NCBI GenBank assembly: GCA_965240325.2
Contig: OZ251227.1
Location: 2,604,001-2,668,000 of the forward strand
Origin: Rebecca billardiae RCC1528
Lineage: Eukaryota > Protista > Haptophyta
DNA length: 64,000 nucleotides
Direction of reading: 5' to 3'
Shown: piece by piece, positions 1-60,413 of the stretch
Numbering within the stretch: position 1 is the first letter of the stretch
Layout of the letters: every line of letters starts with the position of its first letter
The notes under the pieces: model-generated
What the model saw: the letters and a program-made list of their open reading frames with translations, nothing else
Told to the model about the DNA's origin: nothing
The model's database searches: none
Translations under genes and position numbers: made by a program

Positions 1-3000
1 TGAGCGCGAGCCCGCGCGCGTTCACCGCCCAGCCCGCGAAGGCGCGGTGCTGCGAGCGCTTCGACCAGCGGCCGAGAGCGACGTCCAGCGTGCCGCGCGC
101 CGCGGCGCTCCGCCGGTGGTCGTCGCGCCACGCGTCGAAGAGCCGCGCCTGCGCGCCGTGCACCCAGCTGCGCGCCGCGTGCCGTGCGAGGGCGCGCTCG
201 CGCGCGCGCGCCGCCCAGCCGTCGAACGCGGCGTGCTGCGCGCGCAGCGTCCACCGGCCGAGTGACGCGCCGAGCGACGCGCGCGCCTCGCCCAGCGCGC
301 GCGCGCCGAGCGCCCACGCGCGGAAGAGCCGCGCGCTCTCGCCGTGCAGGAACGTGCGCGCGCCGCGCAGCAGCAGCGCGCGCGACGCCGCCTCCGCGTC
401 CCAGCTGCGCCACGACGCGCGCAGCGAGCGCTGCGACCAGTGCGCCACCGTCGCGCCCAGCGTCGCGCGCATCGCCTCCCTCGCGCGGTGGTCGTCGCGC
501 CACGCGTCGAAGAGCCGCGCCTGCGCGCCGTGCGTGAACGCGCGCACGGCGTGCCGCACGAGCCCGCGCTCGCGCGCGTTCTCCGCCCAGCCGCCAAACG
601 CTGCGCGCAGCGTGCGCTGCGACCACCGCCCGGCGGCGGGCTCGAGCAGCGACAGCGCCTCGCGCAGCGCGCGCGCCCAGTCGGACCAGCCGAGGAACGC
701 GCGAGCCAGGCCGCCCTTCATCGCGACCACGAGGGCGCGCCGCTGCAACTCGCGCGCGCGCACCTCGGCCGCCCACAGGGACCACGTCGCCAGCAGCGAC
801 CCCGCCGCCCAGCGCTCGACAGAGGAGTCGAGCGTGCGCAGCGCGGAGGCGCGCGCCGCGCTGAACTCCATCCAGCACGAGAGCGCGCGCGCGAGCGCGC
901 CGCCCATGAAGCGGCGCACGCCAGAGCGCAGCAGCTGCGCGCGCGATGCGGCCTCGTCCCACGAGCGCCACGCCTTGTGCACCGAGGCCAGCTCCCAGCG
1001 CACCATCACCACGGCCGCGCGCTCGAGCACGGACAGCTGCGCCACCGCCGTCCGCTTCCACGACGCGAACGCAAAGCCCACGCCCGTGACGGGGCCCTCC
1101 ACGAGCGCGGTGGCGGCGAACATGAGCTGCGCGCGCTGCGTCGCGAACACAGTCCACGCGCGCCACGCACGGCCCTGCGCCATCGAGGCGAACGCGCGCG
1201 CCGGCGCGGCGAGCAGCTCGCGCGCGCGCGCCAGCTCGGCCACGCCCGCGCGCCACACGTCAAAGAGCCGCGCCTGCGCGCCGTGCACCCAGTCGCGCGC
1301 CGAGCGGCGCAGCAGCGCGCGCCCGTGCGCGTTGTCCGCCCAGCCCGCAAACGCGAACGACTGCGAGCGCTTCGACCAGCGGCCGAGCGCCGTGCCCAGC
1401 GTGCCGCGAGCGTCGCGCACCGCGCGCGCGCCGGATACCCAGCGGTGGTACAGCCGCGCCGACTCGCCGTGCACCAACGCCTGCGCGGAACGACGCGCGA
1501 GCGCGCGCTCGCGCGCGCGCGCCGCCCAGCCGTCGAACGCGGCGTGCTGCGCGCGCAGCGTCCACCGGCCGAGCGACACGCCGAGCGACGTGCGCGCCTC
1601 GCCCAGCGCGCGCGCGCCGAGCGCCCACGCGCGGAAGAGCCGCGCGCTCTCGCCGTGCAGGAACGTGCGCGCGCCGCGCAGCAGCAGCGCGCGCGACGCC
1701 GCCTCCGCGTCCCAGCTGCGCCATGATGCGCGCAGCGAGCGCTGCGACCAGTGCGCCACCGTCGCGCCCAGCGTCGCGCGCATCGCCACCTTCGCGCGGT
1801 GGTCGTCGCGCCACGCGTCGAAGAGCCGCGCCTGCGCGCCGTGCGTGAACGTGCGTACGGCGCGCCGCACGAGCCCGCGCTCACGCGCGTTCTCCGCCCA
1901 GCCGCCAAACGCGGCGTGCAGCGTGCGCTGCGACCACCGACCCGCCGCCGGCTCGAGCAGCGACAGCGCGTCGCGCAGCGCGCGCGCCCAGTCGGACCAG
2001 CCGAGGAACGCGCGAGCCAGGCCGCCCTTCATCGCGACCACGAGGGCGCGCCGCTGCAACTCGCGCGCGCGCACCTCGGCCGCCCACAGGGACCACGTCG
2101 CCAGCAGCGACCCCGCCGCCCAGCGCTCGACAGAGGAGTCGAGCGTGCGCAGCGCGGAGGCGCGCGCGGATGAAAACTCCGTCCAGCACGAGAGCGCGCG
2201 CGCGAGCGCGCCGCCCATGAAGCGGCGCACGCCAGAGCGCAGCAGCTGCGCGCGCGACGCGGCCTCGTCCCACGAGCGCCACGCCTTGTGCACCGACGCC
2301 AGCTCCCAGCGCACCATCACCACGGCCGCGCGCTCGAGCACGGACAGCTGCGCCACCGCCGTCCGCTTCCACGACGCGAACGCAAAGCCCACGCCGGTGA
2401 CGGGGCCCTCCACGAGCGCGGTGGCGGCGAACATGAGCTGCGCGCGCTGCGTCGCGAACACAGTCCACGCGCGCCACGCGCGGCCCTGCGCCATCGAGGC
2501 GAACGCGCGCGCCGGCGCGGCGAGCAGCTCTCGCGCGCGCGCCAGCTCGGCCACGCCCGCGCGCCACACGTCAAAGAGCCGCGCCTGCGCGCCGTGCACC
2601 CAGTCGCGCGCGGTGCGGCGGATGAGCGCGAGCCCGCGCGCGTTGTCCGCCCAGCCCGCGAAGGCGCGGTGCTGCGAGCGCTTCGACCAGCGGCCGAGCG
2701 CGACGTCCAGCGTGCCGCGCGCGGCGGCGCGCCGCCGGTGGTCGTCGCACCACGCGTCGAAGAGTCGCGCCTGCGCGCCGTGCACCCAGCTGCGCGCCGC
2801 GTGCCGTGCGAGGGCGCGCTCGCGCGCGCGCGCCGCCCAGCCGCCAAACGCGGCGTGCTGCGCGCGCAGCGTCCACCGGCCGAGTGACGCGCCGAGCGAC
2901 GCGCGCGCCTCGCCCAGCGCGCGCGCGCCGAGCGCCCACGCGCGGAAGAGCCGCGCGCTCTCGCCGTGCAGGAACGTGCGCGCGCCGCGCAGCAGCAGCG

Positions 3001-6000
3001 CGCGCGACGCCGCCTCCGCGTCCCAGCTGCGCCACGACGCGCGCAGCGAGCGCTGCGACCAGTGCGCCACCGTCGCGCCCAGCGTCGCGCGCATCGCCTC
3101 CCTCGCGCGGTGGTCGTCGCGCCACGCGTCGAAGAGCCGCGCCTGCGCGCCGTGCGTGAACGCGCGCACGGCGTGCCGCACGAGCCCGCGCTCGCGCGCG
3201 TTCTCCGCCCAGCCGCCAAACGCTGCGTGCAGCGTGCGCTGCGACCACCGCCCGGCGGCGGGCTCGAGCAGCGACAGCGCCTCGCGCAGCGCGCGCGCCC
3301 AGTCGGACCAGCCGAGGAACGCGCGAGCCAGGCCGCCCTTCATCGCGACCACGAGGGCGCGCCGCTGCAACTCGCGCGCGCGCACCTCGGCCGCCCACAG
3401 GGACCACGTCGCCAGCAGCGACCCCGCCGCCCAGCGCTCGACAGAGGAGTCGAGCGTGCGCAGCGCGGAGGCGCGCGCCGCGCTGAACTCCATCCAGCAC
3501 GAGAGCGCGCGCGCGAGCGCGCCGCCCATGAAGCGGCGCACGCCAGAGCGCAGCAGTTGCGCGCGGGATGCGGCCTCGTCCCACGAGCGCCACGCCTTGT
3601 GCACCGAGGCCAGCTCCCAGCGCACCATCACCACGGCCGCACGCTCGAGCACGGACAGCTGCGCCACCGCCGTCCGCTTCCACGACGCGAACGCAAAGCC
3701 CACGCCCGTGACGGGGCCCTCCACGAGCGCGGTGGCGGCGAACATGAGCTGCGCGCGCTGCGTCGCGAACACAGTCCACGCGCGCCACGCGCGGCCCTGC
3801 GCCATCGAGGCGAACGCGCGCGCCGGCGCGGCGAGCAGCTCTCGCGCGCGCGCCAGCTCGGCCACGCCCGCGCGCCACACGTCAAAGAGCCGCGCCTGCG
3901 CGCCGTGCACCCAGTCGCGCGCGGAGCGGCGCAGCAGCGAGATGCCGCGCGCGTTCGCCGCCCAGCCCGCAAACGCGAACGACTGCGAGCGCGAAGTCCA
4001 CTTGTGCACCGCCGTGCCCAGCGTGCCGCGAGCGTCGCGCACCGCGCGCGCGCCGGACACCCAGCGGTGGTACAGCCGCGCCGACTCGCCGTGCACAAAC
4101 GCCTGCGCGGAACGACGCGCGAGCGCGCGCTCGCGCGCGCGCGCCGCCCAGCCGTCGAACGCGGCGTGCTGCGAGCGCAGCGTCCACCGGCCGAGCGACA
4201 CGCCGAGCGACGCGCGCATGGCGCCCAGCGCGCGCGCGCCGAGCGCCCACGCGCGGAAGAGCCGCGCGCTCTCGCCGTGCAGGAACGTGCGCGCGCCGCG
4301 CAGCAGCAGCGCGCGCGACGCCGCCTCCGCGTCCCAGCTGCGCCACGACGCGCGCAGCGAGCGCTGCGACCAGTGCACCACCGTCGCGCCCAGCGTCGCG
4401 CGCATCGCCTCCTTCGCGCGGTGGTCGTCGCGCCACGCGTCGAAGAGCCGCGCCTGCGCGCCGTGCGTGAACGTGCGCACGGCGCGCCGCACGAGCCCGC
4501 GCTCGCGCGCGTTCTCCGCCCAGCCGCCAAACGCGGCGTGCAGCGCGCGCTGCGACCACCGACCCGCGGCGGGCTCGAGCAGCGACAGCGCCTCGCGCAG
4601 CGCGCGCGCCCAGTCGGACCAGCCGAAGAACGCGCGGCCCAACCCGCCCTTCATCGCGACCACGAGGGCGCGCCGCCGCAGGAAGAGCGAGCGCGTCTCG
4701 TCGAGCCAGAGCAGCCACGTCGACAGCAGCGTCTGCATCGCCCAGCGCTCGACCGACGCGTCGAGCGACTGCAGCGCGGAGGCGCGCGCGGATGCAAACT
4801 CCATCCAGCACGAGAGCGCGCGCGAAAGCGCGCCGCCGATGAAGCGGCTCACGCCCGCGCGCAGCAGCTGCGCGCGCGACGCCGCCTCCTCCCACGAGCG
4901 CCACGCCTTGTGCACGAGCGCGCGCTCCCAGCGCGCGAGCACCGCGGACGCGCGCTCGAGCACCGAGCGCCGCACGCCACGCGCGCGCCGCAGGGCCTCG
5001 AACGCGCCGCCCACGCCGGCGACGGGGCCCTCGACGAGCGCCACGGCGCCAGCGCGCAGCCGGGCGCGCTGGTACGCGAAGAGGCCCCACGCGCGCCACG
5101 CGCGGCCCTGCGACATGGTCGCGAAGGCGCGGGCGGGCGCGGCGAGCAGCATGCGCGCGCGCGCCAGCTCGGCCACATCCGCGCGCCACACGTCGAAGAG
5201 CCGCGCCTGCGCGCCGTGCGCCCAGTCGCGCGCCGAGCGGCGCAGCAGCCACAGCCCGCGCGCATTGTCCGCCCAGCCCGCCAGCGCAAAGTGCAGCGAG
5301 CGCTTCGACCAGCGGCCGAGGGCCACGTCCAGCGTGCCGCGCGCGGCGACGCGCCGCCGGTGGTCGTCGCGCCACGCGTCGAAGAGCCGCGCCTGCGCGC
5401 CGTGCACCCAGCTGCGCGCCGCGTGCCGCGTGAGCGCGCGCTCGCGCGCGCGTGCCGCCCAGCCGTCGAACGCGGCGGCCTGCGAGCGCAGCGCCCACCG
5501 GCCAAGCGACACGCCCAGCGATGCGCGCGCCTCGCCCAGCACGCGCGCGCCGAGCGCCCACGCGCGGAAGAGCCGCGCGCTCTCGCCGTGCAGGAACGTG
5601 CGCGCGCCGCGCAGCAGCAGCGCGCGCGACGCTGCCTCCGCGTCCCAGCTGCGCCACGACGCGCGCAGCGAGCGCTGCGACCAGTGCGCCACCGTCGCGC
5701 CCAGCGTCAGGCGCATCGCCTCCCTCGCGCGGTGGTCGTCGCGCCACGCGTCGAAGAGCCGCGCCTGCGCGCCGTGCACCCAGCTGCGCGCCGCGCGCCG
5801 CACGAGCCCGCGCTCGCGCGCGTTCTCCGCCCAGCCGCCAAACGCGGCGTGCAGCGCGCGCTGCGACCACCGACCCGCGGCGGGCTCGAGCAGCGACAGC
5901 GCCTCGCGCAGCGCGCGCGCCCAGTCGGACCAGCCGAGGAACGCGCGAGCCAGGCCGCCCTTCATCGCGACCACGAGGGCGCGCCGCTGCAATTCGCGCG

Positions 6001-9000
6001 CGCGCACCTCGGCCGCCCACAGGGACCACGTCGCCAGCAGCGACCCCGCCGCCCAGCGCTCGACAGAGGAGTCGAGCGTGCGCAGCGCGGAGGCGCGCGC
6101 CGCGCTGAACTCCATCCAGCACGAGAGCGCGCGCGCGAGCGCGCCGCCCATGAAGCGGCGCACGCCAGAGCGCAGCAGTTGCGCGCGGGATGCGGCCTCG
6201 TCCCACGAGCGCCACGCCTTGTGCACCGAGGCCAGCTCCCAGCGCACCATCACCACGGCCGCACGCTCGAGCACGGACAGCTGCGCCACCGCCGTCCGCT
6301 TCCACGACGCGAACGCAAAGCCCACTCCCGTGACGGGGCCCTCGGCGAGCGCGGTGGCGGCGGACATGAGCTGCGCGCGCTGCGTCGCGAACACAGTCCA
6401 CGCGCGCCACGCGCGGCCCTGCGCCATCGAGGCGAACGCGCGCGCCGGCGCGGCGAGCAGCTCGCGCGCGCGCGCCAGCTCGGCCACGCCCGCGCGCCAC
6501 ACGTCAAAGAGCCGCGCCTGCGCGCCGTGCACCCAGTCGCGCGCCGAGCGGCGGATGAGCGCGAGCCCGTGCGCGTTGTCCGCCCAGCCCGCGAAGGCGC
6601 GGTGCTGCGAGCGCTTCGACCAGCGGCCGAGCGCGACGTCCAGCGTGCCGCGCGCGGCGGCGCGCCGCCGGTGGTCGTCGCGCCACGCGTCGAAGAGCCG
6701 CGCCTGCGCACCGTGCACCCAGCTGCGCGCCGCGTGCCGCGTGAGCGCGCGCTCGCGCGCGCGCGCCGCCCAGCCGTCGAACGCGGCGTGCTGTGCACGC
6801 AGCGTCCACCGGCCGACCGACGCGCCGAGCGACGCGCGCGCCTCGCCCAGCGCGCGCGCGCCGAGCGCCCACGCGCGGAAGAGCCGCGCGCTCTCGCCGT
6901 GTAGGAACGTGCGCGCGCCGCGCAGCAGCAGCGCGCGCGACGCCGCCTCCGCGTCCCAGCTGCGCCACGACGCGCGCAGCGAGCGCTGCGACCAGTGCGC
7001 CACCGTCGCGCCCAGCGTCGCGCGCATCGCCTCCCTCGCGCGGTGGTCGTCGCGCCACGCGTCGAAGAGCCGCGCCTGCGCGCCGTACGTGAACGTGCGC
7101 ACGGCGCGCCGCACGAGCCCGCGCTCGCGCGCGTTCTCCGCCCAGCCGCCAAACGCGGCGTGCAGCGCGCGCTGCGACCACCGACCCGCGGCGGGCTCGA
7201 GCAGAGCGAGCGCGTCGCGCAGCGCGCGCGCCCAGTCGGACCAGCCGAGGAACGCGCGAGCCAGGCCGCCCTTCATCGCGACCACGAGGGCGCGCCGCTG
7301 CAACTCGCGCGCGCGCACCTCGGACGCCCACAGGGACCACGTCGCCAGCAGCGACCCCGCCGCCCAGCGCTCGACAGAGGAGTCGAGCGTGCGCAGCGCG
7401 GAGGCGCGCGCGGATGCAAACTCCATCCAGCACGAGAGCGCGCGCGAGAGCGCGCCGCCGATGAAGCGGCTCACGCCCGCGCGCAGCAGCTGCGCGCGCG
7501 ACGCCGCCTCCTCCCACGAGCGCCACGCCTTGTGCACGAGCGCGCGCTCCCAGCGCGCGAGCACCGCGGACGCGCGCTCGAGCACCGAGCGCCGCACGCC
7601 ACGAGCGCGCCGCAGGGCCTCGAACGCGCCGCCCACGCCGGCGACGGGGCCCTCGACGAGCGCCACGGTGCCAGCGCGCAGCCGGGCGCGCTGGTACGCG
7701 AAGAGGCCCCACGCGCGCCACGCGCGGCCCTGCGACATGGTCGCGAAGGCGCGGGCGGGCGCGGCGAGCAGCATGCGCGCGCGCGCCAGCTCGGCCACAT
7801 CCGCGCGCCACACGTCGAAGAGCCGCGCCTGCGCGCCGTGCGCCCAGTCGCGCGCCGAGCGGCGCAGCAGCCACAGCCCGCGCGCATTGTCCGCCCAGCC
7901 CGCGAGCGCAAAGTGCAGCGAGCGCTTCGACCAGCGGCGGAGAGCCACGTCCAGCGTGCCGCGCGCGACGGCGCGCCGCCGGTGGTCGTCGCGCCACGTG
8001 TCGAAGAGCCGCGCCTGCGCGCCGTGCACCCAGCTGCGCGCCGCGTGCCGCGTGAGCGCGCGCTCGCGCGCGCGCGCCGCCCAGCCGTCGAACGCGGCGT
8101 GCTGCGAGCGCAGCGCCCACCGGCCGAGCGACGTGCCCAGCGACGCGCGCATGTCGCCCAGCGCGCGCGCGCCGAGCGCCCACGCGCGGAAGAGCCGCGC
8201 GCTCTCGCCGTGCAGGAACGTGCGCGCGCCGCGCAGCAGCAGCGCGCGCGACGCCGCCTCCGCGTCCCAGCTGCGCCACGACGCGCGCAGCGAGCGCTGC
8301 GACCAGTGCGCCACCGTCGCGCCCAGCGTCGCGCGCATCGCCTCCCTCGCGCGGTGGTCGTCGCGCCACGCGTCGAAGAGCCGCGCCTGCGCGCCATGCA
8401 CCCAGCTGCGCGCCGCGCGCCGCACGAGCCCGCGCTCGCGCGCGTTCTCCGCCCAGCCGCCAAACGCGGCGTGCAGCGCGCGCTGCGACCACCGACCCGC
8501 GGCGGGCTCGAGCAGCGACAGCGCCTCGCGCAGCGCGCGCGCCCAGTCGGACCAGCCGAGGAACGCGCGAGCCAGGCCGCCCTTCATCGCGACCACGAGG
8601 GCGCGCCGCTGCAACTCGCGCGCGCGCACCTCGGCCGCCCACACGGACCACGTCGCCAGCAGCGACCCCGCCGCCCAGCGCTCGACAGAGGAGTCGAGCG
8701 TGCGCAGCGCGGAGGCGCGCGCCGCGCTGAACTCCGTCCAGCACGAGAGCGCGCGCACGAGCGCGCCGCCGATGAAGCGGCGCACGCCAGAGCGCAGCAG
8801 CTGCGCGCGCGACGCGGCCTCGTCCCACGAGCGCCACGCCTTGTGCACCGAGGCCAGCTCCCAGCGCACCATCACCACGGCCGCGCGCTCGAGCACGGAC
8901 AGCTGCGCCATCGCCGTCCGCTTCCACGACGCGAACGCAAAGCCCACGCCCGTGACGGGGCCCTCGGCGAGCGCGGTGGCGGCGGACATGAGCTGCGCGC

Positions 9001-9870
9001 GCTGCATCGCGAACACAGTCCACGCGCGCCACGCGCGGCCCTGCGCCATCGAGGCGAACGCGCGCGCCGGCGCGGCGAGCAGCTCTCGCGCGCGCGCCAG
9101 CTCGGCCACGCCCGTGCGCCACACGTCAAAGAGCCGCGCCTGCGCGCCGTGCACCCAGTCGCGCGCCGAGCGGCGGATGAGCGCGAGCCCGTGCGCGTTG
9201 TCCGCCCAGCCCGCGAAGGCGCGGTGCTGCGAGCGCTTCGACCAGCGGCCGAGGGCCACGTCCAGCGTGCCGCGCGCGGCGGCGCGCCGCCGGTGGTCGT
9301 CGCGCCACGTGTCGAAGAGCCGCGCCTGCGCGCCGTGCACCCAGCTTCGGGCCGCATTCCGCGTGAGTGCGCGCTCGCGCGCGCGCGCCGCCCAGCCGTC
9401 GAACGCGGCATGCTGCGAGCGCAGCGCCCACCGGCCGACCGACGCGCCGAGCGACGCGCGCATGTCGCCCAGCGCGCGCGCGCCGAGCGCCCACGCGCGG
9501 AAGAGCCGCGCGCTCTCGCCGTGCAGGAACGTGCGCGCGCCGCGCAGCAGCAGCGCGCGCGACGCTGCCTCCGCGTCCCAGCTGCGCCACGACGCGCGCA
9601 GCGAGCGCTGCGACCAGTGCGCCACCGTCGCGCCCAGCGTCGCGCGCATCGCCTCCCTCGCGCGGTGGTCGTCGCGCCACGCGTCGAAGAGCCGCGCCTG
9701 CGCGCCGTGCGTGAACGTGCGCACGGCGCGCCGCACGAGCCCGCGCTCGCGCGCGTTCTCCGCCCAGCCGCCAAACGCGGCGTGCAGCGCGCGCTGCGAC
9801 CACCGACCCGCGGCGGGCTCGAGCAGCGACAGCGCCTCGCGCAGCGCGCGCGCCCAGTCGGACCAGCGGT
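1..9870 (-). repeat. Coding tandem array, 1311 bp (437 aa) unit, ~7.5 copies, continuing off the left edge
   Basis: The sequence at 1 recurs at 2623. Shadow ORFs recur at 1006/2317/3628/6250/8872 and 1260/2571/3882/6504/9126, all multiples of 1311 apart. One unit = 14 W-terminated repeats (7x33 + 6x29 + 1x32 = 437 aa). Confidence 0.95.
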
Positions 9871-21572: not shown

Positions 21573-21604
<32 letters not shown>

Positions 21605-24600: not shown

Positions 24601-27600
24601 CGCGGCCGATCCAGCGGCGGAGCGCGCGGCCCTCGCCGCGGCGCGCGAGCGCGCGGCCGGCGGCGCGGGCGCGGCCGCGCACGCGCGCCGCCGCGGACCA
24701 CGGCACGAACGCGCGCGCCGCGCCGCCGCGCAGCTCGGCCGCGGCCGAGACGGCGAGGCCGCGCAGCCGCAGCGCGCGCGCCGCCGCGGCCGCGTCGGCC
24801 GCGGCCGCGAGCGCGCCGCGCCACGTGTGCAGCGCGCGCGCGCCGCGGTCGGCGGCGAAGGCGGCGGCGCCGCGGCGCAGCGCGCGCCGCGCCGCGCCCG
24901 CGCCCGCCCAGCGGCGCATCGCGCGCGCCGCGCCCTGCTGCGCCCAGCGCGCGAGCGACGCGCGCGCGGTCGCGGCCGCGGCCGCGGCCGCGGCCGCCGC
25001 CGCCGCCCAGCACATGAGCGCTCGCGCCTCGCCGCGCCGGCGCAGGCGGTGCACGACGGCGCGCGCGGACGCGCGCGTCGCGGCGTGCGCGTCGAGCGAG
25101 CGCCACGCGCGGTGCGCCGCGCCGTGCGCCCAGCGCACCGCGCACGCCTCGCGCAGCCGCAAGCCGTCGAGGCCGTCCGCCGTGCGGACGAGCCACGCGC
25201 CCCACGCGCGCGCCTGGCCCGCGTGCGTGAGCCGCGCGAGCCCGCGGCGCAGCGCGGCGCGCAGCGCGGCGCCGGCGCGCCAGCCGCGCAGCGCGCGGCA
25301 GACGGCGCGGTTGAGCAGCGCGCCGCCCGCGCCGCGCATCAGCGCGAGCGCCTCGCGCCGCGCGCCCGCCGCCTCGGCCCACGCGAGCAGCGCGCGCGCC
25401 GCGCCGCGGTGCCGCAGCCGGCCCGCCGCGCGCCGCGCCGACAGGTGCGTCGCCGCGCGCTCGAGCCACCAGCCCCACGAGCCGCGGAGCGCGCGGCTGA
25501 GCCAGCGGTGGCCCGCCGCGTCGAGCGTGAGGCGGCCGTCCGCGAGCGCCGCGGCGAGCGCCGCCCACGCGTTCAGCGCGCGCGCCACGTCGCGCGCGAG
25601 CGCGCGCCTGCACACGACGCCCATCACCGCCGCGTCCTCGGCCGCGCCCAGCCACGAGCGCCACGTGCGCGCGAGCGAGGCGGCGGCCCAGACGGCGGCG
25701 ACGGTGCCGAGCGCCGCGCGCGCGGCCGCGGAGGCGTCGAGCGCGCCGCGCCACGCGCCGAGCGCGCGCGACGCCGCGCGCGACACCCAGCGCCGCACCA
25801 CCGCGCGCGCGGCGAGCCGGCGCGCGGACGCGCGCCGCCACGCCGAGTGCGCCGCGGCGAGGCCGGGCGAGCGCCAGCGCGCGCCGACCGCGCCGAGCGC
25901 GAGGCGCTGCGCGGCGGCGTCGGCCCAGCCGCGCAGCGCGCCGTGCGCGCGGCGCGCGCCCAGCCGCGCCGACGCGCGCAGCCGCGCGTCGCGCAGCTCG
26001 AGCGCCGCGGCGGTCGCGTCCGCCCAGCCGCCGAGCGCGCGCGCCGCGCCGCGGTGCCGCAGCCGCGCGCCCGCGCGCCGCGCCGCGCGCCACAGCTCGC
26101 GCGCGCCGCGCCACGCGCCCCACGTGCCGCGCACGGCGGCGAGGCGCCACGAGCCGAGCGCGCCGCCGAGCGCGCCCGCCGCGTCCGCCGCGTCCGCCGC
26201 GGCCGACGCCCAGCGCGCGAGCGCGCGCGCCGCCGAGCGGTGGCGCAGCCGCAGCGCCGCCACGCGCATCGCGCGCAGCAGCTCGGCGCCGTCCGCCCAG
26301 CCGCGCAGCGCGCGCGAGCGCGCGCGCGCGTCGGCCGAGCCGACGCGCGCGGCGACGGCGCGCGCGGCGCGGCGCTCCGCGGCGTTCGCCGCCCACGTGC
26401 GCAGCGCGCGCGGCCGCGCGCCCGCCGCGTGCTCGAGCGCGCGCCGCAGCTCGCGCAGCTGCGCCGCGGCGCCGCGCCACGCGCGCAGCGCGCGCACCTC
26501 CGCCGGCCGCACCCACGCCGCGCCGAGCCGGCGGCGCTCGCGCGCGTCGGCGATCGCGGCGCGCCAGCGGCGGAGCGCGGCGCGCGCGGCGCGGCCGCCA
26601 AGCAGCGCGCGCGCGCGCGCGCGCGCCTCGCGCAGCGCGCGCGCCGCGGCGAGCGCGCCCGTCCAGCCGCCGAGCGCGCGCGCCGCGCCGCGGTGCCGCA
26701 GCCGCGCGCCCGCGCGCCGCGCCGCGCGCCACAGCTCGCGCGCGCCGCGCCACGCGGCCCACGACGCGCGGCGCTCGCGGTCGGCCCACGCGCCGAGCGC
26801 GCCGCCGAGCGCGCCGCGCGCCTCGCGGCCGTCGGCGGCGAGCGCGGCCCACGCGCGCAGCGCCGCGCCCGCGCCGCGCAGCGCCCAGCGCCGCGCGGCG
26901 ACGTGCGCCGCCGCGCGCGCCGCGAGCGCGCCGAGCCACGCGCGCCACGAGCCGACGATCGCGCGGTTGCCCCACGCGCCGAGCGCGCCGCGCGCGCGCG
27001 CGCGCGGGCCGCGGCCGTCGCGCGCGGCGGCGCGCCACGTGCGCAGCGCGCGCGACGCGCCGACGCGCAGCCCCTCGCCCACCGCGAGCCGCAGCCGCGC
27101 GAGCTCGGCGCAGCGCGCCGCCCAGCCGTCGAACGCGCGCCCAAGCTTGCGGTTGCGCAGCCGGCCGGCGTACGGCAGGAGCGCGCGGCGCTCGGCGGAG
27201 GCGGCGCGCCACACGCCCCACGTGCGCCGCGCGGGGTGCGCGGCGCGGCGCGCGAGCGCGAGCGCCTCGCGCGCGCGCGCCGCCGCGCCGCGCCACGCGA
27301 GCAGCGCGCGCGCCTCGCCGCGCCGCCGCAGCCGCCCTGCGCCGCGCCGCAGCAGCCGGCGCTGCGCGCCCGCGCGCGCGAGCGCGCGCATCGCGCCGCG
27401 CGTCGCGCGGCCGCGGAAGAGGCGGCCGCCGGCCGCGAGCGTCTCGCGCGCGTCGAGCGCGCGCGCCGTCGCGTCGTCCCACTTGCGCAGCACGCGGTGC
27501 ACCGCGCGGTGCCTCAGCCGGAGCAGCGGCGCGAGCAGCCGGAGCCGCGCCGCCGCGTGCGCGGCGAGGCTGCGCCACGCGCGCGCGCGCGCCGGGTGGC

Positions 27601-30600
27601 GCAGCCGCGCGGCCGCGGCGCGCACGGCCGCGAGGCCCTCGGCGCGCGCGCGGAGCCACGCGGCCCACGCGCTGAGCGCGCGGCGCGTGCCGCGGTGCGC
27701 GAGCGCGCCCACGCCGCGCGCGAGCGCGCCGCGCGCGCGCCGGCCGCGCGACGCGACCTCGGCCCACGCGCGCAGCGCGCGGCCCGCGCGCGCGCCGCGC
27801 AGCGCCGCCGCCGGGCGCTCGAGCGCGCGCAGCGCGTCGGCGCGCGCGGCGGCGCGCGCCGTCCACGCGCCGAGCGCGCGCGCCTTGGCCGGCGCGCGCA
27901 TCCGGCCGGCGGCGCCGCGGAGCATGCGCCGGCGGCGCGCGCCGGCGCGCCAGCCGCCGAGCGCGGCGCGGCGCGAGCGCGCCGCCTGCACAGAGCGCGC
28001 CGCCTCGAGCGAGCGCGCGCGCGCCGCGGCGGACGCGGCGCCGTCGGCCCAGCCGCCGTACGCGCGCGCGCGCTCGCGGTTGCGCAGCCGCGAGATGGCG
28101 GAGCGCGCGAGCCGCGTGCGCCGCGCGCCGTCGCGCGCGGCGGCGAGCGCGGCGGTGAGCTCGCGCTGCGACCAGCGCGCCAGCCCCGCGCGCAGCGTCT
28201 CGCGCGACTCGCGCAGCGCGCCGCACGTGCGCGCCCAGCGGCGGAGCGCGCCGCCCTCGGCGCCGCGCGCGGCGCGCGCGGCGGCGCGCCGCGCGTTGCG
28301 CCACGCCGCGCCGCCCGCGCGCCACCACGCGTGCGCCTCGCCGAGCAGCGCGCGCAGCGCGGCGGCGCGCGCCACGTCGGCCGCGCGCGCGCGCGCCGCC
28401 TCGCCCTCCGCGCCGCCGCCGAGCTCGGGCGCGCGCCCCGCCCACACGAGGAAGCCGCGCCGGCGCGCGCCACCGACGAGTGCCGACGCCGCCACGCGGC
28501 CGAGCGCGCGCGCCTCGCCGCGCGCGCGCCAGTAGCGCCACGTCGCGGCGAGCAGCGGCGACTTCCACCGCCGGCCGAGCGCCTGCGCCGCCGCGCGCTC
28601 CGACGCCTCGCCGCGCCACGCGCGCAGCGCGCCGTGCGCGTGCCGCAGCCGGTGCTGCGCGCGCGCGCGCGCGACCGTCTCGCGCTCGAAGCGGCGCGCG
28701 CCGATCGTGTCGCGCCAGCCGGCGAGCGCGCGCGCGCGCGCGGCCGAGTCGCCGCCGCGCACGCGCGCGAGCGCGCGGCGCATGGCGCGCGCGTCGCGCG
28801 CGCCCGCGTCGAGCCCGGCCCACGCGCGCCGCAGCCCGGCGGTGCGCCACCGCCGCACCGCGCGGCCGGCCGCCTCCCTGGCCGCGCGCGCCTCGCGCGC
28901 CGCGCCCGCCCACGAGCGCACGGCGAGCGACTCGGCGGCGCGCGCCGCGCGCGCGGCGAACGGGCGCAGCCGGCGCGCGGTCGCGCCGCGCGCGCGCAGC
29001 TTGTTGAGCGCAGCGCGCACGCCGCGCATCGCGAGCGACGCGGCGGCGCCGCGCGCGGCCGCGAGCTCGGCGCGGCGCGACGCCATCAGCAGGCGCCAGC
29101 GGCGCGTCGCGCGCGAGGTGCCGCGGTGGCGCAGCGCGAGCGCGGCGCGGCGCATCAGCGCCGCGCCCGCGGCCGACTCGGCGGCGCGCTGCAGCGCGCG
29201 CCACGCGCCGCCGAGCGCGCGGCCCTGCCAGCGCGCCACGCCCTTGCGCAGCGCGGCGCGCGCGGTCGCGACCGCCGCCGCGCCGCCGAGCCAGCCGTTG
29301 AGCGCGCGCACGAGGCCGTTGGCGAGCGCGCGGCGCGCGACGACCATCGCGACCGCCTCGCCCTCGAGGAAGCGCAGCCACGAGCGCCACGCGCGCCAGC
29401 GCGAGCCATCGGCCCAGCCGGCGAGCGCGCGGCGCGCGCGCCACTGCGCGGCGACGGCGCCGACGAGCCCGGAGAAGGCGAGCGCGAGCGGCCGGCTCGC
29501 CAGCCGCGCGGCGGCGCGCGCCGCGGCCGCGGGCCGCAGCGCCGCGCGCCAGCGGCGCAGCCCGCGCGCGAGGCCGGGCGACGCGAGGGTCGCGACGAAG
29601 TTGCGCATGGCGCGCGCGTCGGCGCGGTCGTCGGCGACGCGCTGCGCCCATGCGCGCATCGCGCGCCACGCCGGGCCGCGCCGCCAGCGCGCGAGCAGCA
29701 GGTGGAGCGCCATCCGGCGCCGCGCCTCCGCGCGCCACAGCCGCGCGCCCGCGCCCGCGTGCCGCAGCCGCAGCCGCGCGCCCGCGCGCTCCAGCTGCGC
29801 CGCGAGCTCGGCCGTGCCGCGCACGTACGCGCGCCACCCGCCCCACGCGCGCGCCTCGGCGCGGTGCCGCAGCCGGCCGGCCGCGCCGCGCGCGCGCGCG
29901 CGCAGCGACAAATAGTCGCCCCACGCGAGCCACGCGCGCGCCTCCTCGCGGTGGCGCAGCCGGCCGGCCGCGAGCCGCGTGCGCGCGCGCAGCGCCGCGT
30001 GCTCGCGCCACGAGTTGAGCGCGCGCGCCTCGGGCGTGCGGCGCAGCCGCCCGCCGAGGCGGCGCGCGCGCGCGCGCGTCGCGAGGTACGCGCGCCAGCC
30101 GCCGAGCGCGCGCGCCTCCGCCACGCGCCGCATGCGCCGGCCGATGCCCGCCGCGCGCTCGCGCAGCGCGAGGTACTCGTCCCACGCGAGCCACGCGCGC
30201 GCGGCGCCGCGGTGGCGCAGCCGGCCCATCGCGGCGCGCGAGCGCGCGCGCAGCTCGACGAAGCCGCGCCAGCTGCCCCACGCGCGCGACTCGGCCACGT
30301 GCCGCATCCGCCCGCCGAGCGCGCGCGCGTGCGCGCGCGCGGCCAGATACGCGCGCCAGCCGTTCCACGCGCGCGCCTTGGGGATCGAGCGCATGCGCCG
30401 GCCGGCGCGCCCGCCCGCGTGCCGCGCGCGCTCGCGCGCGAGCGCGCTCGCGCGCCACGCGTTGAGCGCGCGGCCGACGCCGCCGTGGCGCATGCGGCGC
30501 ACGAGCCCGCGCGCGCGCGCGCGCGTCGACACAAAGCCGCGCCAGCTGTTCCACGCGTGTGCCTTGGGCAGGCTGCGCATGCGCCCGCCGAGGCCGCGCG

Positions 30601-33600
30601 CGCGCGCGCGCAGCTCGAGGTACGCGCGCCAGCTGTTCCACGCGCGCGCCTTGGGGATCGAGCGCATGCGCCCGCCGAGCCCGCGCGCGCGCGCGCGCAG
30701 CTCGAGGTGCGCGCGCCAGCTGCCCCACGCGCGCGACTCGGCCACGTGCCGCATCCGCCCGCCGAGCGCGCGCGCGTGGTCGCGCGCGGCCAAATACGCG
30801 CGCCAGCTGCCCCACGCCTTGGCCTTGGGCACGTGGCGCATGCGCCCGCCGATGAAGCGAGCGTGCGCGCGCGTCGCGAGGTACCCGCGCCAGCCGTTCC
30901 ACGCCTTGGCCTTGGGCACGTGCCGCATGCGCAGGCCGAGGCCGCGCGCGCGCGCGCGCGCCGCGACAAAGCTGCGCCAGCTGCCCCACGCACGCGCCTC
31001 CGGCACGTGGCGCATGCGCCGGCCGAGGCCGCGCGCGTGGTCGCGCGCCGCGACGAACGCGCGCCAGCTGCCGAGCGCGCGCGCCTCGCCGCCGCGGCGC
31101 ATGCGGCGCGCGAGCGCGCGCGCGCGCTCGCGCGTCGCGAGGTACGCGCGCCAGCCGCCGAGCGCGCGCGCCTCCGCCACGCGCCGCATGCGCCGGCCCA
31201 TGCCCGCCGCGCGCTCGCGCAGCGCGAGGTACTCGTCCCACGCGAGCCACGCGCGCGCGGCGCCGCGGTGGCGCAGCCGGCCCATCGCGGCGCGCGAGCG
31301 CGCGCGCAGCTCGACGAAGCCGCGCCAGCTGCCCCACGCGCGCGACTCGGCCACGTGCCGCATCCGCCCGCCGAGCCCGCGCGCGCGCGCGCGCAGCTCG
31401 AGGTGCGCGCGCCAGCTGCCCCACGCGCGCGACTCGGCCACGTGCCGCATCCGCCCGCCGAGCCCGCGCGCGCGCGCGCGCAGCTCGAGGTACGCGCGCC
31501 AGCCGTTCCACGCCTTGGCCTTGGGCACGTGGCGCATGCGCCCGCCGAGCCCGCGCGCGCGGTCGCGCGCGGCGACAAAGCCGCGCCACGAGCCGAGCGC
31601 GCGCGCCTCGCCCACGCGGCGCATGCGGCGCAGCAGCTCCTTCGAGCGCGCGCGCAGCTCGAGGCACGCACCCCACGAGCCCCAGCCGCGCGAGACGCCC
31701 GAGCGGCGCAGCCGGAAGAGCACGGCACGCGCGCGCGCGCGCAGCGACTCCTCCGCGCGCCACGCCGCCCACGAGCCGACGAGCTCGCGCGCGCCCCAGC
31801 GGCGCGCGGCCGTGCCGGCGTGCGCGCGCGCGGCGCGCTTGTCGGCCGCGCCGCCGCGCCAGCCGTTGAGCGCGGCGATGAGGCCGGGCGGCGCGCGGAG
31901 GCGCGCGCCAAACTTGCGGCGCGCGGCCGCGTCCGCCGCCCACGCGCGCAGCGCGTACGTGAGCCCGCGCTGCCGCAGCGCCGCCACGCCGCGGCGCAGC
32001 GCGCGCAGCGTCGCGCCGCGCGCGGCCGCGCGCGGCCGCCAGCCAAGCAGCGCGCGCGCGAGCCCGCGGTGGCGCAGCCGCGCGGCGGCGGCGCGCGCGC
32101 GCGCGCGCGGGCCGCCGTGCTGCCGCCACGCGCGCAGCGCGAGCACGAGCGCGCGCATGCGCGGCGCGAGCACGCGGCCCGCCTTGATCCGCCACGCGTA
32201 CCGCGCGGCGCACGCCTCGCGCCAGCGCGCGGCCGCGGCCGCGCGCAGCCGCAGCCGCGCGACAGACGCGGCGCGCGCGAGCGTCTCCAGCTTGGCGCGG
32301 CGGCGCAGCCGCTGGCGGCGCCACGTGCGCACGGCGCGCGCGAGCGCGGGCGAGCGCAGCGTCGCGGCGATCCGCGCGGCGCGCGAGCGCGCGCCCGCCA
32401 GCGCGTCGATCCACGCCGTGAGGCCGCGCGAGACGCCGCGCCGGCGCAGCCGGCGCACCGCGCGGCGCGCGGTGAGCACGCGCGCGCGCTCGGCGCGCCA
32501 CGAGTTCCACGAGCGGCCGAGGCCGCGCGCGGCCCAGCGGAGCGCGCCGACGCGCAGCGCGGCGACGCGCGCGCTCAGCGCGTCCGCCGCAGCGGCCCAC
32601 GAGCGCGTCGCGCGCGCGAGCCGGCGCAGCCGCAGGCGCGCGTAGAACGGGCGCGCGCGCGCGAGCATGGCCGCGCCGTCCGCGCGCCGCGCCGCGCCGT
32701 CGTCGTCGCCCTCGCCGTACTCGCCGTGCGGCGAGACCCACTGCCGCCAGCCGCGGCGCAGCTTGCGCGCGCGGAAGGCGGAGGCGCCGCGCCGGATCGC
32801 GCCGAGGCTCTCGGCGCGGCGCACGAGGTGCGCCAGCCAGCCGTTCAGCCCGGAGCGCAGCCCCCGCGCGCCGAGCGCGCCGACGCCGCGCCGCAGCAGC
32901 ACGAGCCGCGCGCGCCGCGCGCCAGCCGTCGCGCGCCAGCCCGAGACCGCGCGGCCGAGGCCGCGGTGGCGCAGCCGCGCGGCGGCGCGCTGCGCGGCGG
33001 TGGTGTGCGTGCTCGCGCCGCGCCACGCGCGGAACGCGCCGCCGAGCTCGCGGCCGCGCCACCGCGCCGCGCCGCGCGCGAGCGCCGCGCGCGCCGCCGC
33101 GCGCGCCGCCGCGCCCGCGAGCCAGCCCAGCAGGCCGCGCGCGAGGCCGCGGTTGCGCAGCCGGCGCGCGGCGAGGCCGGCGGCGCGGCCGCGCTCGCCG
33201 CCGCGCGTGCCGTCGTCGGCCCACGCGCCGAAGGTGCGCGACACGCGCCCGCGCAGCGCGCGCGCGCCCACCAGCCGCGCCGTCGCCGAGACGCGCGCGC
33301 GCCGCTGCATGCGCGCGAGCGCGAAGCGGAACGCGGCGCGGCACGCGGCGAACGCAAAGAACTGCGCGCCGACGCGCACCTTTGCGTGGCGCGAGGTGCG
33401 GACGGCCCACCAGCCGAGCGCGGAGGCGCAGCGGCGGAGGCGGCGGCGCTCGGCCGCGATCCCGCCGCGCACGCCGCGCCGCCGCGCGCCGCCCGTCGCC
33501 TCGCGCCACGCGCCGAACCGCGCGCGCACGCGCAGGTTGAACCACTGCCACGCGGCGGCGCGCAGCAGCATTGCCGACTGGCGCGCGCTCGCCGCGCGCG

Positions 33601-34606
33601 CGTTCGCGTGGCGGCGGAGGCGGCGGAGCGCGCGGGCGGTCGCGATGGCGCGGCCGCCGGAGGCCTTGAACGTCGGGCGGCGGCGCGCCGACTCGCGCAC
33701 GCGCGCGAGCCAGCGGTCGAGCCCGCGCGCGAGCATCACCGCGCGCGACTCGGCGCGCAGGTCGTCGCCCGACGCGGCCGAGCTCACGTCCTCGTCCGCG
33801 TCGTCGTCGTGGGCGGCGGCGGCGGCGGCGGCGCGCCAGCCGCCACCGGGCGAGGGCGTGCGGCGCGCCTCGTACGGCGAGGCCGTGCCGCCCGAGAGCC
33901 GCGTGCCCTCGCCCTCGAGCCCGCCCAGCCCGAGCAGCCCCGCCGACGCCGACGCGCTCGGCTGCGAGTCCATCGTAAGCCGCAGGCGCTCGTGCAGGTG
34001 CTCGACCATCAGCAGCGTCGAGCGGAGCTCCTCCTCGGCGGAGACGAGCTGGCGCGAGAGCGAGGGCGAGGGCGGCTCGTCGGGCGCCGCGCCGAAGAGC
34101 GCGCCGCGCCCGTCGCCCAGCCGCCCCTTGAGCATCTCGACCTCCGCCTCGAGCCGCTCGATGTTGCCGAGCGAAGACGAGAGCCGCTGCTGCAGCCGAG
34201 CAATGTCCGCCACCTCCGCGTCGGCCGCGCGGTAGCGCTCGGCGCTGGCGCGCGGCGCGCGCGCGGGCGAGGCGCGGCGCGGCGGGGGCGGCGGCGCGCG
34301 GCGCGTGCGCCGGCGCCACAGCGCCATCGCCTCGCTCATCGCGTCCGCCTCGTCGGCGGCACGCGCAGCGTCGTCGTACGCAGCGCCGAGGTCGTCGTCG
34401 TCGTCGTAGCCGTAGTCGTCGTAGTTGAAGGCGTCGTCTTGGTCGTCGTACGCGGCGCCACCCGCGTCGAAGGGCGGCGACGCGCCTCCGCGCGCGTCCC
34501 GCTCATCCGTCAGCAGCTGCACGAGCTCGTCCTCGACCTCGGCGAGCCGGCGGCTCGCGGGCGAGCGCCGGCCCGGGCTCGGCCCGCGCCGAGTGCCCGA
34601 GGACAT
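2..34606 (-). CDS. Giant Sfi1-repeat (putative centrin-binding) protein, >=11,535 aa, 3' end outside the window
   Basis: ATG at 34606-34604 (MSSGTRRGPSPGRRSPASRRLAEVEDELVQLL...), with an upstream in-frame TGA at 34912-34910. No minus-strand ORF in this frame is listed anywhere in 1-35100, which is expected if the frame has no stop before the window edge. Manual translation gives protein-like text with W every 29 or 33 aa, e.g. AENARERGLVRHAVRAFTHGAQARLFDAW / SDWARALREALSLLEPAAGRWSQRTLRAAFGGW. These match the Sfi1 consensus AX7LLX3(F/L)X2W. The + strand 'VVVAPRVEEPR' ORFs are its exact antisense. Confidence 0.9.
29950..31650 (-). repeat. Coding tandem array of 87 bp (29 aa) Sfi1-type repeats, ~19 copies
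   Basis: gccagctgccccac recurs at 31324 and 31411 (87 bp apart). The unit reads RAHLELRARARGLGGRMRHVAESRAWGSW. A block at ~30070-30320 is duplicated 1056 bp away (aggtactcgt at 30171 and 31227). Confidence 0.85.
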
Positions 34607-35139
34607 CGAGGCGGCGAGTGCTGCGCGCGAGGCGAGGGAAGGCTGTACGATGCGCGTGCGCGGAGCTGCCGGCACGCGTCTCGCAGAGGCTTCGCGGCGC
34701 TCGCTCGCTACAAGCGAGGCAGCGCAGCAGGCGTCGGCTCGTCGATCGAGGCTTGGGCCCCAATCGCCAGGCAGGCAGGCCAGTGGCACTCGTCGGCTTC
34801 GGCGTCGCCCGCGCAAGGCCGAGCTCGGGCTCGAGCTCGGTCGGGGCCCAGATTGCTGTTGGCTCGATGAGGCCGAGCGCGAGCGCGCAACAGCCTGTGT
34901 GCCCTTGCTTCATCAGCGCTGTTTCGCGTGGTGCGCGCGCTGAAAAGTGAAGGGTGAAGGTGAGAACTCTTGAAGAATACGGCAAACCCATGGGTCGGCT
35001 GGGGGACCAACCGTCTTCATGGCGTATTACCGGATTGCTGTTTCTCCTCCGGACTTGCTGTTACACCTGAAAAAGGCTTTTCCATTTTCGTCGACGTCTC
35101 GTCAGGCCAAGCTAAAAGCGCACGTTGGCCACCCCACCG

Positions 35140-60278: not shown

Positions 60279-60413
<135 letters not shown>

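What the first reader, a model, noticed from the sequence alone, without database searches (positions are those of the whole stretch)
2..34606. Hidden giant gene: >=11,535 aa intronless Sfi1-repeat protein, a candidate backbone of a micrometre-scale centrin/Ca2+ fibre
Seen: one minus-strand frame stays open from ATG 34606 to the window edge. It is missing from the ORF track only because the stop lies outside the window. From ~33750 onward the protein is an almost continuous Ala/Arg-rich chain with [F/W/L]xxW every ~29-33 aa, e.g. ALVVAMKGGLARAFLGW and AAGRWSQRTLRAAFGGW. Known: this fits the Sfi1 centrin-binding consensus AX7LLX3(F/L)X2W. Yeast and human Sfi1 have only ~20 repeats, while giant Sfi1-like proteins form contractile centrin/spasmin fibres in ciliates (Paramecium infraciliary lattice, Spirostomum myonemes). 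Inference: ~11,250 aa / ~31 aa gives about 360 centrin sites, >1.2 MDa, and ~1.7 um if fully helical (0.15 nm/residue). In a probable haptophyte this suggests an undescribed centrin-based contractile or ruler system (fibrous flagellar root, nucleus-basal body connector, or haptonema-associated).
Basis: partly seen in the sequence, partly recalled or inferred. Interest (0 to 1): 0.95.

Follow-up and report, generated by a model that had tools for sequence, protein, structure and literature searches.

The report
Giant Sfi1-like repeat protein gene
A haptophyte-like alga carries an unannotated single open reading frame of at least 11,535 codons, encoding about 360 tandem Trp-ended helical repeats related to Sfi1, the protein that scaffolds centrin fibres; this would be the first such giant outside ciliates, but its expression and centrin binding are untested.

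Summary
The minus-strand frame from ATG 34606 to base 2 has 11,535 codons and no stop (about 63 expected). GC3 is 0.98 against GC2 0.71, and dN/dS between repeat copies is below 1. It encodes about 1.25 MDa of Ala/Arg/Trp-rich protein and is cut off by the window edge.

The protein has a 290-aa head with two confident helices. After that come about 340-365 units that alternate strictly between 29 and 33 residues. The last 3,500 aa are nested into 437-aa super-repeats.

Sfi1 kinship is partly supported:
- Against: Pfam Sfi1 and PDB sequence searches do not hit the window protein directly.
- For: it has 103 relatives, and two of them pass Pfam's Sfi1 threshold in the region that aligns with it.
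- For: reversed and shuffled controls score zero.
- For: Kilmartin's published Sfi1 patterns occur 58 and 38 times (5 and 0.7 expected).
- For: AF2 predicts helices of up to about 120 residues.

A fragmented Pavlovales orthologue shares the 29/33 alternation. Centrin binding, fibre formation, transcription and the true gene end could not be tested.

I rate it a new variant of a known kind. The scan also noted this gene in neighbouring windows.

The parts
2..34606 (-). Partial CDS of the giant gene (5' end complete, 3' end beyond the window): 11,535 codons, 1,249 kDa, pI about 12
   Evidence: 0 stops vs about 63 expected; GC1/2/3 0.83/0.71/0.98; composition A30 R19 L11 G9 W5.4%
34607..35142 (-). 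Upstream non-coding stretch: in-frame TGA TGA at 34915-34910, a less GC-rich intergenic tract, and the stop of the neighbouring epimerase gene near 35143
33737..34606 (-). N-terminal head (aa 1-290): disordered Asp/Tyr-rich and Pro-rich segments plus two long helices
   Evidence: sequence; AF2 single-sequence model; no homologues or Pfam family
33968..34258 (-). Two confidently predicted long helices (aa 117-169 and 181-213, pLDDT about 86-93): candidate coiled-coil or anchoring module
31628..33736 (-). First, irregular Trp-ended repeats (aa about 291-990), spacings 29/33 with gaps
29825..31627 (-). Nearly pure 29-residue repeat array (87-bp period, about 20 copies; units like RHV.E.RAWGSWRAYL...)
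   Evidence: TRF period 87/174/261; register print; spacing string
10490..29824 (-). Old, divergent Ala/Arg-rich zone (GC 86-88%) of alternating 33+29 = 62-residue double units (aa about 1600-8039)
   Evidence: identity and Trp autocorrelation peak at 62/124; TRF 186/372-bp periods; units listed
2..10489 (-). Eight tandem 437-aa (1,311-bp) super-repeats, each about 7 double units; adjacent copies 60-92% aa identity; array continues past the window edge
   Evidence: autocorrelation 437 aa at 0.70-0.86; copy identities and dN/dS 0.19-0.88; Trp is the most conserved residue type

Best explanation
This is the first 34.6 kb of a giant, apparently single-exon gene for an Sfi1-family scaffold protein. 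After a 290-aa head with two long helices, the chain is one extended, proline-poor, very basic alpha-helix. It is built from about 360 units that alternate between 33 and 29 residues. Each unit shows a hydrophobic stripe on one helical face (positions -19/-16/-12/-7/-4,-3) ending in an invariant Trp. In Sfi1 this stripe is the docking site for one acidic centrin-type EF-hand protein. The likely product is a centrin-coated rod at least 1.7 um long, with about +4 charge per unit neutralised by the bound centrins. Such rods would bundle into a Ca2+-responsive fibre at or near the flagellar apparatus, anchored or dimerised through the helical head. Shown here: the open frame, coding signature, selection, repeat grammar, homology to Sfi1-positive proteins, conservation of the grammar in a Pavlovales orthologue, and predicted helicity. 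Inferred: centrin binding, stoichiometry, fibre formation, Ca2+ response and location.
For: A real gene: 0 stops vs 63 expected and GC3 0.98; dN/dS 0.19-0.88 between super-repeat copies; Trp columns are the most conserved, 78% invariant. Relatives: 103 hits in 1.84 billion proteins, top hits from Pavlovales sp. CCMP2436 at E 5e-174 to 1e-29. Reversed and shuffled versions of all hits score 0 bits against a forward mean of 56. Link to Sfi1: P0016 (24.6 bits) and P0021 (29.6 bits) exceed Pfam Sfi1's 22-bit cutoff at residues 526-708 and 239-348, overlapping the stretches aligned to the window (604-858, 209-343). Sfi1 is the only Pfam family shared by more than one of 35 relatives. Composition-adjusted BLASTP gives in-register alignments at 2e-13 (P0021) and 4e-16 (Prymnesium P0013, which UniRef names an Sfi1 domain protein). 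Published Sfi1 patterns (PMC2173958): A-x12-[FL]-x2-W-[KRH] 58 hits vs 5.1 expected; the paired pattern 38 vs 0.7. Spacing of 29/33 lies inside the 23-36 range of yeast and matches the 33-mers of human Sfi1. Proline is about 1%. AF2 gives about 97% helix with helices up to about 120 residues and no compact fold. The 29/33 alternation is conserved at about 33% identity in the Pavlovales fragments: 60 alternations vs 9 same-type neighbours.
Against: Pfam Sfi1 does not hit any piece of the window protein, even at E<=10. The strict yeast consensus occurs 0 times. The full L8-L4-W1 triad (PMC3871271) is present in only 50% of 33-mers and 31% of 29-mers, and the residue after Trp is more often Ala than Lys/Arg. 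Comparing a single double-unit profile with Sfi1-positive relatives gives weak scores (E about 0.004-0.007, probability <10%). Atlas feature hits to Sfi1 clusters are weak (<=0.67), and IQ-motif clusters are as frequent. AF2 confidence is low (pLDDT 56, pTM 0.17). There is no expression evidence, since no sequencing run was listed. No centrin gene was identified and no complex was modelled.
Confidence: 0.65

Rival explanations
1. It has the same Sfi1-like rod architecture, but the partner is not canonical centrin. It could be a calmodulin-like or spasmin-like EF-hand protein, or two different partners read the 33-mers and the 29-mers separately.
For: The two unit classes have distinct conserved signatures. 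33-mers: W(-12), L(-7), [W/L/F](-3), W0, A(+1). 29-mers: [W/F/L](-12), H(-10), G(-9), L(-4), F(-3), W0, R(+1). Strict alternation is conserved across Pavlovales. Atlas features resemble IQ-motif proteins about as often as Sfi1. Two partner types were also proposed for Spirostomum GSBPs (PMC9946354).
Against: Every characterised Sfi1-family repeat binds centrin-family proteins (PMC2173958, PMC9946354, bioRxiv 2025.08.11.669701). No IQ Pfam hit was found in the window protein.
Confidence: 0.17
2. It is a structural or polyanion-binding basic helical protein that needs no EF-hand partner. The Ala/Arg helix would bind nucleic acid, polyphosphate or acidic polysaccharide, and the Trp residues would mediate self-association.
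For: Net charge is +1,603, pI about 12, about +4 per unit. The direct Sfi1 HMM match fails. Much of the Ala/Arg/Gly richness could simply reflect 86-88% GC.
Against: The conserved positions form an i+3/i+4 hydrophobic stripe ending in Trp, and this stripe, not the charge pattern, carries the information. Homology runs to Sfi1-positive proteins that are Lys/Glu-rich and not extreme in charge. Canonical Sfi1 repeats also end in basic residues and bind acidic centrins.
Confidence: 0.1
3. It is a non-functional or mis-assembled locus: a GC-rich coding-derived satellite whose frame stays open because stop codons are rare, or whose copy number is inflated by assembly.
For: At 78-88% GC, other frames also hold ORFs of 4,800-5,600 aa. 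The super-repeat copies are up to 93% identical in DNA, which makes them hard to assemble. The Pavlovales orthologue is broken by a 4,065-N gap and a contig end. No expression data are available.
Against: Only this frame has 0 stops in 11,535 codons and GC3 of 0.98. dN/dS is below 1 in all 21 copy pairs, and Trp is preferentially conserved. Trp periodicity persists through the old divergent 19 kb. The grammar is conserved in another genus at about 33% identity.
Confidence: 0.05

Closest known systems
Sfi1 of yeast and human (Kilmartin 2003, PMC2173958; Pfam PF08457)
   Same: Tandem helical repeats ending in a conserved Trp with a hydrophobic residue at -3; spacing within 23-36 residues (human Sfi1 has continuous 33-mers); very few prolines; basic repeats; non-repeat N-terminal domain. 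Kilmartin's search patterns are met many times over.
   Different: About 360 units instead of about 21-24. At least 11,535 aa instead of about 950-1,250. Strict 29/33 alternation. Ala/Arg-dominated composition. The strict LL consensus is absent, and Ala is more frequent than Lys/Arg after Trp. Not detected by the Pfam model. Likely a paralogue, not the centrosomal orthologue (not resolved).
Spirostomum GSBP1/GSBP2 (13,125 and 17,974 aa; PMC9946354; bioRxiv 2024.11.07.622534)
   Same: Giant (>1 MDa), Trp-rich, apparently intronless Sfi1-like backbones made of a two-part unit nested in higher-order repeats. Both were missed or mishandled by routine gene prediction and poly(A) RNA-seq.
   Different: The unit is 62 aa (33+29) with a Trp in each half. 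GSBPs have a 69-aa unit (36+33) with one Trp and two helix-breaking prolines. This gives about 340-365 Trp sites in the window part alone, against 184 and 267. AF2 predicts long straight helices here, not kinks. The lineage is a haptophyte-like small flagellate, not a giant ciliate. Direct homology to GSBPs was not tested because no GSBP sequence was available.
Paramecium PtCenBP1 and the Stentor Sfi1 family (bioRxiv 2025.08.11.669701)
   Same: Expanded Sfi1-repeat scaffolds that organise cortical centrin networks. Unchecked earlier scan notes suggest several paralogues exist in this genome too.
   Different: Ciliate units are 69 aa, have up to about 50 repeats in Stentor, and are predicted to kink into a coil. 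Here the spacing is as dense as in canonical Sfi1, and the protein is several-fold larger.
Pavlovales sp. CCMP2436 'hypothetical proteins' T492DRAFT_911093/911094 (KAJ1625172.1 and neighbour), 895293, 918933
   Same: Closest relatives (E 5e-174 to 1e-29, 32-35% identity). Same composition (A 25-27%, W 5%) and the same 29/33 alternation. Two partial models lie on one strand across an assembly gap and run into a contig end, so the orthologue is probably also giant.
   Different: They are annotated only as partial fragments of 708-3,250 aa. Sequence identity is low. No 437-aa super-repeat was examined there.

Membership tests
Sfi1 family (Sfi1 repeats) | Tandem repeats with a conserved Trp at 23-36-residue spacing | tested here: met
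   338 repeat-terminal Trp; 294 of 337 spacings are 27-36 aa, mainly 29 (138) and 33 (120)
Sfi1 family (Sfi1 repeats) | Kilmartin's ScanProsite definitions: A-x12-[FL]-x2-W-[KRH] at least 3 times, or [FWL]xxW[KRH]-x21-34-[FWL]xxW[KRH] at least twice (PMC2173958) | tested here: met
   58 hits (5.1 +/- 2.2 in locally shuffled protein) and 38 hits (0.7 +/- 0.9)
Sfi1 family (Sfi1 repeats) | Strict consensus AX7LLX3(F/L)X2W(K/R) | tested here: not met
   0 exact matches. The profile has A(-16), A(-8), L(-7), [L/F/W](-3), W0, [A/R](+1)
Sfi1 family (Sfi1 repeats) | Reverse hydrophobic triad L8xxxL4xxW1 that docks centrin (PMC3871271) | tested here: inconclusive
   The full triad is in 50% of 33-class units and 31% of 29-class units. 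39% of 29-class units use L(-4)F(-3) instead. Position -12 is hydrophobic in 81-91%
Sfi1 family (Sfi1 repeats) | Match to Pfam PF08457 at or above the gathering score (22 bits) | tested here: not met
   No hit in nine pieces of 330-5,000 aa, even at E<=10. It is met only transitively: relatives P0016 (24.6 bits) and P0021 (29.6 bits) pass in the regions aligned to the window
Sfi1 family (Sfi1 repeats) | Proline-poor repeat region forming a long continuous alpha-helix | tested here: met
   Pro is 0.97% of the repeat region. AF2 gives helices at 78-200, 202-311 and 321-436 of a 437-aa super-repeat, at low confidence
Sfi1 family (Sfi1 repeats) | Binds centrin about 1:1 per repeat; localises to the centrosome, basal body or centrin fibres | not testable with these tools
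   No multimer prediction, no centrin sequence of this organism, no experimental data
Giant ciliate myoneme backbones (GSBP type) | 69-aa unit (36+33) with two helix-breaking prolines and one Trp per unit | tested here: not met
   The unit is 62 aa (33+29), with 0.16-0.31 Pro per sub-unit and a Trp terminus in each sub-unit
Giant ciliate myoneme backbones (GSBP type) | More than 10,000 aa, continuous frame without introns, nested higher-order repeats | tested here: met
   At least 11,535 codons in one frame with 437-aa super-repeats. Absence of introns was not shown with RNA
IQ-motif arrays (calmodulin/light-chain binding) | IQxxxRGxxxR motif at 23-26-residue spacing; Pfam PF00612 | tested here: not met
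   No IQ Pfam hit. Spacing is 29/33. There is only a weak Atlas feature resemblance

The most novel reading that the evidence does not exclude
The gene continues for at least 17 kb beyond the window (unchecked earlier notes) and encodes one polypeptide of about 17,000 aa or more with over 500 docking sites. That would make it the largest Sfi1-family protein and the first giant centrin scaffold outside ciliates. In a cell only a few micrometres long it would form a 2-3 um Ca2+-responsive fibre. The conserved 29/33 alternation would set a defined two-partner or superhelical arrangement of EF-hand proteins, acting as a contractile root or molecular ruler of the flagellar or haptonemal apparatus.
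Probability: 0.25. Interest if true: 0.85.

Novelty: new variant of a known kind. Interest (0 to 1): 0.62.

Why it matters
Giant Sfi1-like backbones have so far been described only in ciliates, where their size is explained by ultrafast contraction of very large cells. PMC9946354 even argues that such backbones are lineage-specific inventions.

A protein of at least 1.25 MDa with canonical-density Sfi1-type sites, in a small haptophyte-like flagellate and conserved in a second Pavlovales genome, would have several consequences. It would show that gigantism of centrin scaffolds arose independently in algae. It would provide a molecular candidate for the fibrous or centrin-positive root structures seen by microscopy in haptophytes. 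It would also offer a very regular 62-residue lattice for studying how centrin-centrin contacts depend on repeat spacing.

It is also a practical warning. The gene is absent from protein databases at anything like its real length, and its orthologue is split into 'partial hypothetical proteins' by an assembly gap.

Tried and rejected
**Direct family and structure searches**
- Pfam on nine window pieces gave no Sfi1 or other credible family.
- PDB sequence searches with a 1,200-aa piece, a 62-column repeat profile and a 526-column family profile gave nothing.
- The Pfam-Sfi1-positive relative P0021 also finds no Sfi1 chain in the PDB. This test therefore has no power, and its negative result is uninformative.
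- hhalign of one double-unit profile against P0021 and P0016 gave only E 0.004-0.007 at low probability. Significance comes only from many repeats together.

**Homologue searches**
- The word-indexed search found only P0002 because low-complexity words saturated the candidate list.
- No relative of 5,500-17,500 aa was found.
- The N-terminal head has no homologues and only anonymous Atlas neighbours.
- Atlas on the repeats gave weak, mixed Sfi1 and IQ leads.

**Expression and other tests**
- The look-up of sequencing runs listed no run on two stretches, so read laying was never used and transcription is untested.
- The alpha-solenoid rival was rejected because AF2 gives helices of over 100 residues, not short hairpins.
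- Fold searches were not run, because long single helices at pLDDT 56 would give meaningless matches.
- P0013, which UniRef names an Sfi1 domain protein, did not reach Sfi1 in my Pfam scan, so I did not count it as Pfam-positive.
Full report
**1. The observation**

The reverse complement of window 2-34606 starts with ATG and translates into 11,535 residues without a stop. Mononucleotide shuffles of the same DNA give 62.7 +/- 7.8 stops in that frame (minimum 42). The other five frames contain 6-72 stops.

The region is 78-88% GC, so long accidental ORFs are common here. Other frames hold ORFs of 4,800-5,600 aa. Only this frame shows the coding signature GC1/2/3 = 0.83/0.71/0.98. The competing ORFs carry the 0.98 at position 1 or 2, so they are shadows of this frame.

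An in-frame TGA TGA lies at 34915-34910 with no ATG before 34606. A less GC-rich tract separates the gene from the stop of a neighbouring epimerase gene near 35143. The ORF tool does not list the frame because it runs off the window edge.

**2. Anatomy**

The in-window product is 1,249 kDa with pI about 12 and net charge +1,603. Its composition is A 30%, R 19%, L 11%, G 9% and W 5.4%.

Residues 1-290 form a head. It has disordered Asp/Tyr-rich and Pro-rich stretches and two helices predicted with pLDDT about 86-93 (aa 117-169 and 181-213). The head has no Pfam family, no homologue and no informative Atlas neighbour.

Trp-ended repeats start at about aa 290:
- There are 338 recognisable repeat-terminal Trp, and long gaps imply about 26 degenerate units.
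- Spacings are 29 aa (138 cases) and 33 aa (120 cases).
- There are 196 alternations between the two classes, against 27 and 29 same-class neighbours.

The repeats fall into three zones:
- A nearly pure 29-mer array at window 29825-31627.
- A 19-kb old, divergent Ala/Arg-rich zone of 62-aa (33+29) double units at 86-88% GC.
- Eight 437-aa (1,311-bp) super-repeats from 10489 to the window edge.

**3. Is it a functional gene?**

Between super-repeat copies, dN/dS is 0.19-0.88, below 1 in all 21 pairs. These values are probably overestimates, because GC3 of 0.98 constrains synonymous change.

Trp is the most conserved residue type across copies: 78% of Trp columns are invariant, against 52% for Ala and 17% for Val. 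In the old zone I looked only at positions not conditioned by my unit definition. The most informative are -12, -7, -16/-19 and -4 in 33-mers, and -12, -10 (His), -9 (Gly), -7 and -5 (Arg) in 29-mers. Together with -3 and 0 these form an i+3/i+4 stripe on one helical face.

An exhaustive HMMER search of 1.84 billion representatives found 103 relatives. The best are four partial 'hypothetical proteins' of Pavlovales sp. CCMP2436 at 32-35% identity. Two of them lie on the same strand either side of a 4,065-N gap and run into a contig end. That orthologue is therefore probably also giant, at least about 6,700 aa, and is fragmented by assembly. It shares the 29/33 alternation: 60 alternations against 9 same-type neighbours. 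Conservation of the spacing grammar at about 33% identity is strong evidence of constraint.

No protein of 5,500-17,500 aa in 5.8 billion clusters matches. The gene is therefore unannotated at its real length.

**4. Is it Sfi1-like?**

*Direct tests failed.* Pfam Sfi1 does not hit any piece. The strict yeast consensus occurs 0 times. PDB sequence and profile searches are empty, but a Pfam-positive relative also misses the PDB Sfi1 chains, so that test is uninformative. One double-unit profile against Sfi1-positive relatives gives only E about 0.004-0.007.

*Indirect tests succeeded.*
- Sfi1 is the only Pfam family shared by more than one of 35 relatives.
- P0016 (24.6 bits) and P0021 (29.6 bits) exceed the curated 22-bit cutoff at residues that overlap their alignments with the window protein, which have library-wide E-values of 1.9e-11 and 2.5e-08.
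- Composition-adjusted BLASTP aligns the repeats in register. For example, RFMGGALARALSCW in the window aligns with RFLNGALVRAFEHW in P0021, at 2e-13. The alignment with a Prymnesium protein that UniRef names an Sfi1 domain protein scores 4e-16.
- Reversed and shuffled versions of all 103 hits score nothing, against a forward mean of 56 bits. The similarity therefore does not come from composition or bare periodicity.
- Kilmartin's own search patterns (PMC2173958) are met 58 times (5.1 expected) and 38 times (0.7 expected).
- The Sfi1-type triad L8xxxL4xxW1 (PMC3871271) is complete in 50% of 33-mers and 31% of 29-mers. The 29-mers often use L(-4)F(-3) instead.
- Proline is about 1%.
- AF2 predicts a 437-aa super-repeat as about 97% helix, with helices of 110-123 residues and no compact fold. 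Confidence is low (pLDDT 56, pTM 0.17), as expected for a partner-less rod. This argues against an alpha-solenoid.

I conclude that the protein belongs to the Sfi1 repeat superfamily as a divergent branch that the current Pfam model does not recognise.

**5. Mechanism**

By analogy with Sfi1-centrin filaments and ciliate myonemes, each unit would dock one acidic centrin-type EF-hand protein on the hydrophobic stripe, neutralising about +4 charge per unit. The in-window repeat region of about 11,250 aa would span about 1.7 um as a helix.

Unlike Spirostomum and Stentor units (69 aa, proline-kinked), this rod is proline-poor with canonical-density sites. It therefore resembles a greatly lengthened canonical Sfi1 more than a GSBP.

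The two unit classes have different signatures, which allows for two partners or a fixed superhelical register. In haptophytes, centrin is reported around basal bodies with arrays that may follow flagellar roots, and as a dot at the haptonema tip. That makes the flagellar apparatus the most plausible location. All of this paragraph is inference.

**6. Context**

The neighbours are ordinary genes: an NAD-dependent epimerase, a Na+/H+ exchanger, organellar-type ribosomal protein L7/L12 and a WD40 protein. The best hits and the extreme GC fit a pavlovophyte. Diacronema lutheri is reported at 73% GC with 45% single-exon genes. The organism was not identified here.

Earlier first-stage notes of this scan, all unchecked, describe the same gene from neighbouring windows. 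They place a stop-like junction about 17.4 kb left of this window, which would give about 17,300 aa, and report further Sfi1-like giant genes elsewhere in the genome. I confirmed the 1,311-bp array and the 29/33 grammar within my window. The rest I could not test.

**7. Limits**

No public sequencing run was listed for two stretches, so transcription, strand and splicing are untested, and read laying was not used. Centrin binding could not be modelled. The assembly of the 1,311-bp array could not be checked.

**8. Verdict**

This is a real, very large, unannotated gene for a divergent Sfi1-family repeat rod. It is a new variant of a known kind: giant centrin scaffolds, previously known only from ciliates. 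It is of clear interest to protist cytoskeleton research, but its proposed function rests on homology and motif logic.

Noticed in passing
L001 (NCBI GCA_026770615.1, MU631596.1, first 20 kb, reversed): In Pavlovales sp. CCMP2436 the closest relatives P0002 and P0001 (T492DRAFT_911094/911093) lie on one strand either side of a 4,065-N assembly gap, and the second runs into the contig end. They look like fragments of one giant orthologue annotated as two partial hypothetical proteins.
   Followed up: partly
window 2-10489: The 437-aa super-repeat copies fall into two interleaved subtypes. Odd-numbered copies are close to each other (dS 0.03-0.09), while neighbours differ more (dS 0.11-0.25). 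This suggests duplication in 2-copy (2.6-kb) blocks or patchy gene conversion.
   Followed up: partly
window 20318-34867 (+) and 17613-34319 (-, other frame): These are shadow ORFs of 4,850 and 5,568 aa, produced by the GC3 = 0.98 periodicity of the real frame. They could be mistaken for genes by ORF callers.
   Followed up: yes
window 61966-63189: An 80% GC tract with strong negative GC skew and 12-bp/153-219-bp tandem repeats. One + frame reads as a Pro/Ala-rich low-complexity protein (APPPGAPSP..., extensin- or mucin-like). No Pfam family was found.
   Followed up: partly
window 60282-60411: A perfect (CT)65 microsatellite in the least GC-rich part of the window.
   Followed up: no
window 52913-55590: A ribosomal protein L7/L12 gene (minus strand, with an N-terminal extension suggesting organellar targeting) lies head-to-head with a 651-aa WD40-repeat gene, leaving about 100 bp between their ORFs.
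   Followed up: no
window 10000-30000: The old middle of the gene reaches 86-88% GC with Ala up to 39%, yet Trp stays at 4-6% throughout. Composition appears driven to GC-rich codons everywhere except the motif positions.
   Followed up: partly
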